A stretch of DNA of 64,000 bases from Magallana gigas (Eukaryota): NCBI RefSeq assembly GCF_963853765.1, contig NC_088855.1, positions 46,314,001-46,378,000 on the forward strand. Reading direction: 5' to 3'. The notes under the pieces were generated by a model. It ran no database searches. It had not been told where the DNA came from and worked only from the letters and a program-made list of their open reading frames with translations. Shown here piece by piece: positions 12,753-21,888 of this stretch. The position numbers were made by a program, and so were the translations under genes. Within the stretch, counting starts at the first letter, position 1, and each line of letters opens with the position of its first letter.

Positions 12753-21888
<9,136 letters not shown>

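What the first reader, a model, noticed from the sequence alone, without database searches (positions are those of the whole stretch)
19897..19911. Paraplegin-like m-AAA subunit whose zinc-binding HExxH motif is replaced by YEAGR: a candidate protease-dead (FtsHi-like) animal mitochondrial AAA protein
Seen: codons tac gag gca gga aga (Y-E-A-G-R) sit where FtsH/M41 proteases have H-E-x-G-H, so both zinc-ligating histidines are lost. His to Arg(AGA) needs more than one substitution, which argues against a single read error. Neighbouring protease-domain motifs have also drifted (LGFAQ-type to LGHYQ, GGRASE to AGSATE, TSGAQDD to STAAEKD). In contrast, Walker A, Walker B, the SRH arginine fingers and an aromatic pore-loop residue (IFGG) are intact, and the 18-exon frame is unbroken. 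Established: HExxH supplies two zinc ligands in M41 proteases; plastid FtsHi proteins are ATPase-active but protease-dead; mammalian paraplegin works in hetero-oligomers with AFG3L2. Inference: this lineage keeps SPG7 as a non-proteolytic unfoldase, scaffold or regulatory subunit, or this is a neofunctionalised paralogue.
Basis: partly seen in the sequence, partly recalled or inferred. Interest (0 to 1): 0.88.

Follow-up and report, generated by a model that had tools for sequence, protein, structure and literature searches.

The report
Protease-dead paraplegin conserved in oysters
The only paraplegin (SPG7) gene I could find in oysters has lost both zinc-binding histidines of its protease site yet is tightly conserved, so it probably acts as an ATP-driven motor or scaffold subunit of the mitochondrial m-AAA complex that no longer cuts proteins.

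Summary
Window 19897-19911 reads TAC GAG GCA GGA AGA (YEAGR), where AFG3L2 and FtsH have HEAGH.

- **Gene:** 18 GT-AG exons (12753-21888, + strand) encode exactly the RefSeq protein "m-AAA protease component paraplegin" of Magallana gigas. An RNA-derived contig is colinear with all 18 exons.
- **Distribution:** YEAGR also occurs in M. angulata, Crassostrea virginica, Saccostrea echinata and S. cucullata, with synonymous codon differences. The pearl oyster Pinctada has YMAGH. All 134 other animal SPG7 proteins examined keep H, E and H.
- **Orthology:** the gene nests inside lophotrochozoan SPG7 and shares intron phases with Mytilus SPG7. No intact second copy turned up in the protein database.
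- **Selection:** among oysters the dead protease domain has dN/dS of 0.03-0.06, lower than the AAA domain (0.08-0.13). The former active-site stretch is 94% identical across three genera.
- **Kept motifs:** Walker A and B, sensor 1, the arginine fingers, the catalytic Glu and the third-ligand Asp.
- **Gained:** an aromatic pore-loop residue that canonical SPG7 lacks.

Best reading: a natural, long-maintained pseudoprotease subunit. That it partners with AFG3L2 is inferred, not tested. I found no description in the searchable literature. It is a new variant of a known kind, the plastid FtsHi pseudoproteases.

The parts
12753..21888 (+). Paraplegin (SPG7) orthologue of Magallana gigas: 18 coding exons, 807 aa
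   Evidence: The spliced translation equals P0270 (XP_011446512.2) residue for residue, and all introns are GT-AG. The RNA-derived contig L001 is colinear with all 18 exons.
12753..12908 (+). Exon 1 (aa 1-52), basic N-terminus consistent with a mitochondrial presequence
   Evidence: 12 K+R against 4 D+E in the first 60 aa. Targeting is inferred only.
13309..13426 (+). Exon 2
13828..13995 (+). Exon 3 (Lys/Glu-rich linker)
14149..14291 (+). Exon 4, holds transmembrane segment 1 (aa 152-167; 14160-14207)
   Evidence: Hydropathy peak; coordinates.
14758..14826 (+). Exon 5 (diverged intermembrane-space domain)
   Evidence: Pfam FtsH_ext scores only 18.5 bits, below its 25.5 cut-off.
14973..15097 (+). 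Exon 6
15406..15577 (+). Exon 7, holds transmembrane segment 2 (aa 263-280; 15413-15466)
15717..15875 (+). Exon 8 (start of the AAA module)
17012..17156 (+). Exon 9: Walker A GPPGCGKT (17051-17074) and the start of pore loop 1 (EIFGG, aa 415-419, split over exons 9 and 10)
   Evidence: Position 417 is F, where canonical SPG7 has I, L or V.
17529..17640 (+). Exon 10: Walker B IIFIDELD (17588-17611)
18065..18188 (+). Exon 11: sensor 1 GATNR (18156-18170)
19199..19361 (+). Exon 12: second region of homology with arginine fingers, RPGRLDR (19208-19228)
19730..19956 (+). Exon 13: AAA lid and first helix of the M41-like domain
19897..19911 (+). YEAGR (aa 608-612) in place of HExxH: both zinc-ligand His lost, catalytic Glu kept
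20394..20477 (+). Exon 14: remodelled strand RLGHYQYY (20421-20444), where canonical SPG7 has ALGFAQY
20665..20737 (+). Exon 15: LAGSATE (20689-20709), where canonical SPG7 has LGGRAAE
21142..21302 (+). Exon 16: holds the retained third-ligand Asp D684 in TAAEKDL (motif spans 20734-21158 across the intron)
   Evidence: The equivalence to AFG3L2 D649 rests on my residue count along the alignment printed and on the text read.
21474..21551 (+). Exon 17
21742..21888 (+). Exon 18 with stop codon

Best explanation
This is the Pacific oyster's orthologue of paraplegin (SPG7), one of the two subunit types of the mitochondrial matrix-facing m-AAA protease. In the lineage leading to oysters and pearl oysters the first zinc-ligating histidine became tyrosine. 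Oysters then also replaced the second histidine with arginine, and Pinctada instead replaced the catalytic glutamate. With only one of three zinc ligands left, the M41 domain cannot carry out canonical zinc-dependent peptide hydrolysis. The domain was not discarded. After a burst of change on the stem branches it has been held almost constant, and the remodelled cleft is among the most conserved parts of the protein. The ATPase machinery is complete, and oysters gained an aromatic pore-loop residue like that of AFG3L2. Shown here: the loss of the ligands, orthology, expression, purifying selection and retention of the fold. Inferred: the protein still assembles into the inner-membrane hexamer, most likely alternating with a proteolytically active AFG3L2. 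There it would contribute ATP-driven substrate gripping and unfolding plus the structural protease-ring interface, while AFG3L2 supplies all the cutting.
For: - **Motif:** YEAGR aligns on HEAGH. H608, E609, H612 and D684 are invariant in 134/134 canonical SPG7; oysters have Y, E, R, D and Pinctada has Y, M, H, D.
- **Independent sequences:** the same motif occurs in M. angulata, C. virginica, S. echinata, S. cucullata and dozens of independent contigs. Synonymous codon differences appear inside the motif: TAC/TAT, GAG/GAA, GCA/GCT, GGA/GGC.
- **Expression:** the RNA-derived contig L001 is colinear with all 18 exons.
- **Orthology:** the oyster plus Pinctada clade has support 100/99 inside lophotrochozoan SPG7 (100/99), and the SPG7 clade (100/100) is separate from AFG3-like proteins. 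Intron phases are the same as in Mytilus SPG7.
- **No second copy:** a canonical bivalve query returned no Ostreidae or Pinctada protein among its 120 best hits.
- **Selection:** dN/dS in M41 is 0.058-0.062 (M. gigas vs C. virginica) and 0.026-0.042 (vs Saccostrea). In AAA it is 0.115-0.126 and 0.081-0.089. The cleft, aa 603-650, is 94% identical across three genera.
- **Timing of change:** M41 stem branches measure 0.60 and 0.71, against a crown of 0.06-0.10.
- **Where change fell:** 11/58 invariant M41 columns are changed against 7/120 in AAA (Fisher p = 0.014).
- **ATPase motifs:** all are invariant.
- **Fold:** the AF2 model matches AFG3L2 6nyy with TM 0.72-0.78. Pfam M41 scores 145 bits.
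- **Literature:** paraplegin E575Q still rescues complex I in patient fibroblasts, and one proteolytic-site mutant subunit suffices in yeast (PMC2173682). AFG3L2 binds zinc through H574, H578 and D649, and its pore-loop residue F381 is essential for degradation (bioRxiv 10.1101/551085).
Against: - No biochemical data exist for any oyster m-AAA subunit.
- I could not retrieve an oyster AFG3L2, so its presence and intact HExxH are assumed (one search failed).
- The absence of a second SPG7 rests on a protein database, not on a search of the genome itself.
- The N-terminal intermembrane-space domain is very diverged (22% three-way identity; FtsH_ext below the Pfam cut-off). That could mean altered assembly or partners.
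- The retained Glu and Asp and the very high conservation of the cleft leave room for a residual or different chemistry.
- dS between oyster genera is about 1 or higher, so the dN/dS values are approximate.
- The AF2 model has only moderate confidence (pLDDT 74.6).
- In a heterologous yeast assay, a paraplegin proteolytic-site mutant did abolish complementation (PMC2173682).
Confidence: 0.7

Rival explanations
1. The protein has left the classical m-AAA partnership. It works on its own or with new partners as an ATP-driven unfoldase or translocase, as plastid FtsHi proteins do in the Ycf2 import motor. Its conserved dead cleft would serve as a binding site.
For: Oysters gained an aromatic pore-loop-1 residue (F/F/Y against I/L/V in 134/134 canonical SPG7). 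The intermembrane-space domain and linker diverge very fast. There is a long burst of change in both the AAA and M41 domains on the oyster stem. The former cleft is conserved to a very high degree. The model also aligns to Ycf2-FtsHi subunits (TMq 0.45-0.71).
Against: No evidence exists for new partners. The domain architecture, both transmembrane segments and all inter-subunit ATPase motifs are those of a normal m-AAA subunit. Human paraplegin is reported only in heterohexamers (PMC12994072). Pinctada shares the dead site but keeps the aliphatic pore loop.
Confidence: 0.15
2. It is a neofunctionalised paralogue, and a normal SPG7 with HExxH exists elsewhere in oyster genomes.
For: The branch is very long and the domains are remodelled. 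Only a protein database was searched, not the genome.
Against: A canonical bivalve SPG7 query listed Mytilus, Solemya, Sinanodonta and many gastropods among its 120 best hits (all at least 756 bits). It listed no oyster or Pinctada protein, although annotated proteomes of at least five oyster species are in the database. Intron phases are shared with Mytilus SPG7. Local gene order, CEP76(-) / SPG7(+) / CD225(+), is conserved between M. gigas and Saccostrea.
Confidence: 0.07
3. The domain is still a peptidase using non-canonical metal binding or another mechanism built from Tyr608, Glu609, Arg612 and Asp684.
For: Glu609 and Asp684 are retained, and the whole cleft is extremely conserved among oysters.
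Against: Two of the three zinc ligands are gone. The HExxH histidines are described as strictly conserved and required for activity (10.1101/551085). Pinctada, which shares the H-to-Y change, has also lost the catalytic Glu. Several other invariant cleft residues are replaced.
Confidence: 0.04
4. It is an assembly or read error, or a decaying pseudogene.
For: None found.
Against: The motif is identical in five species and dozens of independent contigs, with synonymous differences. The 18-exon ORF is intact. A spliced transcript exists. dN/dS is 0.03-0.13 in both C-terminal domains.
Confidence: 0.01

Closest known systems
Animal paraplegin / SPG7 (m-AAA protease subunit; human Q9UQ90)
   Same: Orthologous by tree and intron phases. 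Same architecture: presequence-like N-terminus, two transmembrane segments, AAA, lid and M41 fold. All ATPase motifs are shared.
   Different: HExxH is YEAGR. Eleven otherwise invariant M41 residues are replaced. Pore-loop 1 is aromatic rather than aliphatic. The intermembrane-space domain falls below the Pfam FtsH_ext threshold. The branch is roughly 2 to 4.5 times longer than that of other lophotrochozoan SPG7 proteins, depending on the domain and the comparator.
Plastid FtsHi1-5 pseudoproteases (Arabidopsis; Ycf2-FtsHi import motor)
   Same: FtsH-family proteins with an intact or largely intact ATPase and a degenerate HExxH. They are kept under selection and work in hetero-oligomers that include one active-motif subunit (FtsH12).
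   Different: Independent origin: plant plastid envelope against animal mitochondrial inner membrane. FtsHi proteins keep very few active-site residues, and one relocated the domain. The oyster protein keeps the Glu, the Asp and a near-canonical M41 fold. No import-motor role is known or implied here.
Engineered proteolytic-site mutants: paraplegin E575Q and single-subunit Yta10/Yta12 proteolytic-site variants
   Same: A paraplegin-type subunit without proteolytic activity still supports m-AAA function when the partner is active (PMC2173682). This is the experimental counterpart of the oyster state.
   Different: Those are single laboratory substitutions of the catalytic Glu with zinc ligands intact. 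The oyster state is natural, removes the zinc ligands, and is accompanied by wider remodelling of the cleft.
Human AFG3L2 (PDB 6nyy)
   Same: Best structural match (TM 0.72-0.78, 48-49% identity). [quoted passage not shown]
   Different: A different orthologue group (tree). AFG3L2 has the full H574/H578/D649 zinc site and forms homohexamers.

Membership tests
Paraplegin / SPG7 orthologue group | Falls inside the metazoan SPG7 clade, apart from AFG3-like and bacterial FtsH | tested here: met
   SPG7 clade 100/100; lophotrochozoan SPG7 100/99; oyster plus Pinctada clade 100/99.
Paraplegin / SPG7 orthologue group | Gene structure shared with a canonical SPG7 | tested here: met
   The series of 17 intron phases is identical to that of Mytilus SPG7, except for one extra Mytilus intron.
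Paraplegin / SPG7 orthologue group | Architecture: two transmembrane segments, FtsH_ext-type intermembrane domain, AAA, lid, M41 | tested here: inconclusive
   AAA scores 141.7 bits, lid 48.1 and M41 145, all above their cut-offs, and there are two hydropathy peaks. FtsH_ext scores only 18.5 bits against a 25.5 cut-off.
Paraplegin / SPG7 orthologue group | Only SPG7 of the genome (no intact co-orthologue) | tested here: inconclusive
   No oyster or Pinctada canonical SPG7 appears among the 120 best hits of a canonical bivalve query. The genome itself could not be searched.
Paraplegin / SPG7 orthologue group | Assembles with AFG3L2 into heterohexamers | not testable with these tools
   This needs co-IP or blue-native gels. 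Oyster AFG3L2 was not even retrieved.
Active peptidase family M41 | M41 fold / Pfam PF01434 | tested here: met
   145 bits against a cut-off of 29.9. The model matches AFG3L2 and FtsH.
Active peptidase family M41 | HExxH with two zinc-ligating histidines | tested here: not met
   Y608 and R612 replace the two His.
Active peptidase family M41 | Catalytic glutamate of HExxH | tested here: met
   E609 is present in oysters; it is M in Pinctada.
Active peptidase family M41 | Third zinc ligand Asp (AFG3L2 D649) | tested here: met
   D684 is retained; this column is invariant in 134/134 canonical SPG7.
Classical AAA+ ATPase | Walker A Lys, Walker B Asp-Glu, sensor-1 Asn, SRH arginine fingers | tested here: met
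   K390, D443/E444, N490 and R501/R504 lie in columns invariant across 73 sequences.
Classical AAA+ ATPase | Aromatic pore-loop-1 residue | tested here: met
   F417 in M. gigas and C. virginica, and Y in Saccostrea. Canonical SPG7 has I, L or V.
Plastid FtsHi clade | Descent from the plant FtsHi lineages | tested here: not met
   The gene nests within animal SPG7, so the resemblance is convergent loss of the site.

The most novel reading that the evidence does not exclude
In oysters and pearl oysters paraplegin has been converted from a protease into a dedicated non-proteolytic motor and regulatory subunit. The remodelled, extremely conserved former active-site cleft would act as a peptide-binding or gating site. 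In oysters the newly aromatic pore loop would strengthen substrate grip, so that this subunit tunes what the AFG3L2 sites cut. That would be a natural, long-standing demonstration that paraplegin's essential contribution to the m-AAA complex is not proteolysis. I estimate from memory that the state has lasted hundreds of millions of years.
Probability: 0.3. Interest if true: 0.75.

Novelty: new variant of a known kind. Interest (0 to 1): 0.62.

Why it matters
Paraplegin loss causes hereditary spastic paraplegia type 7, and it is still debated how much of its role is proteolytic and how much is structural, ATPase-related or specificity-tuning. A whole bivalve lineage has run on a protease-dead but strongly conserved paraplegin. 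That is a natural experiment bearing directly on this question, and it gives a ready-made set of tolerated and compensating substitutions around the M41 cleft.

As far as the searched literature shows, it also extends FtsH-family pseudoproteases from plant plastids to animal mitochondria. In addition, it flags a wrong functional annotation ("m-AAA protease component") in oyster genomes, which are used for stress and mitochondrial physiology studies.

Tried and rejected
- **Oyster AFG3L2 not retrieved.** No metazoan AFG3L2 id was in hand. The last protein search used a choanoflagellate AFG3-like protein (P0052) and returned only protists, plants, fungi and moths in its top 120. Paper searches for AFG3L2 or AFG3-like protein with Crassostrea or gigas found nothing relevant.
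- **Exact-protein look-ups.** S. echinata isoform X2 and the C. virginica protein were not on record. They were replaced by isoform X1 (L002) and by two short C. virginica contigs covering 505 codons.
- **Wider synteny.** The CEP76 and CD225 neighbours are not within 10 kb of the Pinctada or Mytilus SPG7 genes, so synteny could not test orthology beyond oysters.
- **Unidentified canonical proteins.** The organism behind P0169, P0184, P0186 and P0199 (sister to Mytilus in the tree) could not be identified.
- **Saturated comparisons.** dN/dS between oysters and Pinctada or Mytilus is unusable because dS is saturated. No branch-site test of the stem was attempted for that reason.
- **Earlier scan notes.** They hold nothing on AAA proteases in this genome.
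- **Rejected readings.** Read error, pseudogene and plain annotation artefact.

Full report
**Observation.** Window positions 19897-19911 read TAC GAG GCA GGA AGA, preceded by GCG TAC, giving [10 protein letters not shown]. The exon is bounded by AG at 19728-19729 and GT at 19957-19958. A phmmer search of its 75 in-frame residues against all solved structures aligns it end to end with human AFG3L2 (6nyy) and several FtsH proteins. YEAGR sits exactly on the H-E/Q-A-G-H of those chains.

**The gene.** A full-library phmmer search with the exon found a 748-aa protein identical over the exon, plus fragments at 85-99% identity. Its 90% cluster contains XP_011446512.2, [quoted passage not shown] (P0270, 807 aa), and the M. 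angulata protein. A spliced alignment of P0270 onto the window gives 18 coding exons from 12753 to 21888. Every intron is GT-AG, and the translation is identical to P0270.

Pfam finds AAA (141.7 bits), AAA_lid_3 (48.1) and Peptidase_M41 (145 bits against a cut-off of 29.9). FtsH_ext reaches only 18.5 bits, below its cut-off. Two hydrophobic segments lie at aa 152-167 and 263-280, and the N-terminus is basic.

**Not an error, not a pseudogene.**
- The motif [15 protein letters not shown] occurs in M. gigas, M. angulata, Crassostrea virginica (P0151), Saccostrea echinata (P0152, P0387) and S. cucullata (P0388, P0389).
- It also occurs in dozens of independently assembled contigs.
- At the DNA level the species differ by synonymous changes inside the motif. 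C. virginica has TAC TAT GAA GCT GGC AGA, against TAC TAC GAG GCA GGA AGA in M. gigas.
- A 2359-nt contig assembled from run SRR11244697 (L001) is colinear with all 18 exons and lacks every intron. The gene is therefore transcribed and spliced as modelled.

**Orthology and copy number.**
- In a maximum-likelihood tree of 41 proteins, the three oyster sequences plus Pinctada imbricata form a clade with support 100/99.
- That clade sits inside lophotrochozoan SPG7 (100/99) and inside metazoan SPG7 (100/100). It is separate from AFG3-like proteins and bacterial FtsH.
- The series of intron phases is identical in M. gigas and Saccostrea. It is also the same as in canonical Mytilus SPG7, apart from one extra Mytilus intron.
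- The local gene order CEP76(-) / SPG7(+) / CD225(+) is shared by M. gigas and Saccostrea.
- A search with a canonical bivalve-type SPG7 (P0169) listed Mytilus (946 bits), Solemya, Sinanodonta and many gastropods among its 120 best hits. It listed no protein from any oyster or Pinctada. Annotated proteomes of these species are in the database. No intact second SPG7 is therefore visible.
- This is database evidence. I could not search the genome itself.

**What is lost and what is kept.** Against 134 canonical animal SPG7 proteins:

| Site (M. gigas numbering) | Canonical SPG7 (134/134) | Oysters | Pinctada |
|---|---|---|---|
| First zinc ligand, 608 | H | Y | Y |
| Catalytic residue, 609 | E | E | M |
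| Second zinc ligand, 612 | H | R | H |
| Third zinc ligand, 684 | D | D | D |
| Pore loop 1, 417 | I, L or V | F, F, Y | I |

- D684 corresponds to AFG3L2 D649. I established this by counting residues along the alignment printed; the zinc ligands H574, H578 and D649 are stated in bioRxiv 10.1101/551085.
- Of 58 M41 columns that are at least 95% conserved in canonical SPG7, 11 are replaced in all three oysters: H608Y, H612R, G616S, T634S/N, F640H, P645K, M662V, G665A, R667S, G680A and L757V.
- In the AAA domain 7 of 120 such columns are replaced (Fisher p = 0.014).
- Five of the eleven M41 changes are shared with Pinctada: H608Y, G616S, M662V, R667S and G680A. The first ligand was therefore most parsimoniously lost before oysters and pearl oysters split, and the two lineages then degraded the site further in different ways.
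- Walker A, Walker B, sensor 1 and the SRH arginines lie in columns invariant across 73 sequences.
- The aromatic residue at 417 corresponds to AFG3L2 F381, whose mutation abolishes degradation. The aromatic pore loop is thus a gain in oysters, not a retained feature.

**Selection.** Codon alignments were built from the window, the Saccostrea locus L002 and two C. virginica contigs (505 codons).

| Comparison | Domain | dN | dS | dN/dS |
|---|---|---|---|---|
| M. gigas vs C. virginica | M41 (aa 591-790) | 0.061-0.067 | about 1.0-1.2 | 0.058-0.062 |
| M. gigas vs C. virginica | AAA + lid | | | 0.115-0.126 |
| M. gigas vs Saccostrea | M41 | | | 0.026-0.042 |
| M. gigas vs Saccostrea | AAA + lid | | | 0.081-0.089 |

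- dS is near saturation, so the ratios are approximate. An intact ORF with 87% amino-acid identity at that synonymous divergence still excludes neutral decay.
- Three-way identity among the oyster genera is 22% for aa 1-330, 77% for AAA, 80.5% for M41 and 94% for the former cleft (aa 603-650). The cleft is as conserved as the Walker A region.
- Per-domain branch lengths on the fixed tree show a burst followed by stasis. For M41 the oyster plus pearl-oyster stem is 0.60 and the oyster stem 0.71, while the crown is only 0.06-0.10. For AAA the values are 0.24, 0.51 and 0.09-0.20.
- Pfam M41 scores fall from 201 bits (Mytilus) to 162 (Pinctada) to 145 (M. gigas), while AAA stays at about 141 in all three.

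**Structure.** An AlphaFold2 model of aa 331-807, built from a 73-sequence alignment, has mean pLDDT 74.6. Foldseek's best matches are the chains of substrate-bound human AFG3L2 (TM 0.72-0.78, 48-49% identity). FtsH, YME1 and the Ycf2-FtsHi motor subunits follow. The fold is kept. Side-chain geometry of the dead site cannot be judged from this model.

**Mechanism.**
- Established knowledge: M41 proteases hydrolyse peptides with a zinc ion held by the two HExxH histidines and an aspartate. The m-AAA complex is an AFG3L2 homohexamer or an alternating AFG3L2-paraplegin heterohexamer (PMC12994072; 10.1101/551085).
- A paraplegin proteolytic-site mutant (E575Q) rescued complex I activity in paraplegin-deficient fibroblasts as well as wild type did. 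In yeast one proteolytic-site mutant subunit suffices for respiration. In the weaker heterologous yeast assay the single paraplegin mutant did not complement (PMC2173682).
- I infer that oyster paraplegin is an ATPase-competent, proteolytically dead subunit whose M41-like domain is kept for the protease-ring interface, for substrate or peptide binding, or for both. AFG3L2 would provide the cutting.
- Rival readings are an AFG3L2-independent motor role (about 0.15), a hidden intact paralogue (about 0.07), residual non-canonical peptidase chemistry (about 0.04) and an artefact or pseudogene (about 0.01).

**Comparison with what is known, and novelty.** The 2024 review of inactive metallopeptidase homologues lists only plastid FtsHi1-5 for family M41 (PMC11266112). 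The 2022 FtsH evolution review does the same (PMC9020784). Full-text searches for paraplegin with oyster, SPG7 with bivalve, and AFG3L2 with Crassostrea returned nothing relevant. The gene is annotated in RefSeq as an ordinary protease component.

I file it as a new variant of a known kind. It is a member of the SPG7 orthologue group that fails the defining zinc-site test of active M41 peptidases. It is analogous to FtsHi but not related to it by descent. From my own recollection, not checked here, the Crassostrea-Magallana split is put at roughly 80-100 million years, and the oyster and pearl-oyster split is much older. If so, the state has been maintained for a very long time.

**Limits.**
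- Oyster AFG3L2 was not retrieved.
- Ostrea and other pteriomorph families were not available.
- Pinctada rests on one genome.
- There are no biochemical data.

Noticed in passing
window 28265-29924 (+): The gene downstream of paraplegin is a CD225/dispanin-family membrane protein (Pfam PF04505, 53 bits on the matching part of P0271). The same neighbour follows SPG7 in Saccostrea echinata (L002 29979-31645). The UniRef entry A0A8W8KEP7 (P0271, 946 aa) is a read-through fusion of paraplegin with this gene. An earlier scan note (s1-361756) reads this place as a regulin-like 82-aa microprotein.
   Followed up: partly
window about 6020-12625 (-): A CEP76 homologue lies head to head with paraplegin; its first exon is about 130 bp from paraplegin exon 1. 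The same arrangement occurs in Saccostrea, so the two genes may share a bidirectional promoter region.
   Followed up: partly
window 897-3020 (+): A single uninterrupted 708-aa ORF has RING and B-box zinc fingers (Pfam) and a long C-terminal region with no Pfam hit. It looks like a TRIM-like E3 ligase of the kind that I recall, without checking, being expanded in bivalves.
   Followed up: partly
window 12753-15875 (paraplegin aa 1-330): The N-terminal third (presequence, linker, intermembrane-space domain, post-TM2 linker) evolves very fast even among oysters. Three-way identity is 22%, M. gigas and Saccostrea are 34% identical, and NG86 dN/dS is about 0.5. This contrasts sharply with the C-terminal domains.
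   Followed up: partly
P0132 and P0025 (hits; no window coordinates): Other degenerate m-AAA-type proteins exist. P0132 (839 aa, from a 2917-nt assembled Logan contig, organism unknown) is AFG3-like with HEAGR and TGGYEDL. P0025 (916 aa) has QEAGA. Loss of the zinc site in this family may be more widespread than is documented.
   Followed up: no
P0388 and P0389 (Saccostrea cucullata): Two slightly different paraplegin-like gene models lie on separate contigs (15 kb and 718 kb), and both carry YEAGR. They are either haplotigs or a recent duplicate.
   Followed up: no
L004 (Mytilus galloprovincialis SPG7 locus): Mytilus has one extra intron that splits the exon homologous to window exon 13. The Mytilus and Pinctada genes span 32 kb and 44 kb, against 9 kb in M. 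gigas.
   Followed up: no
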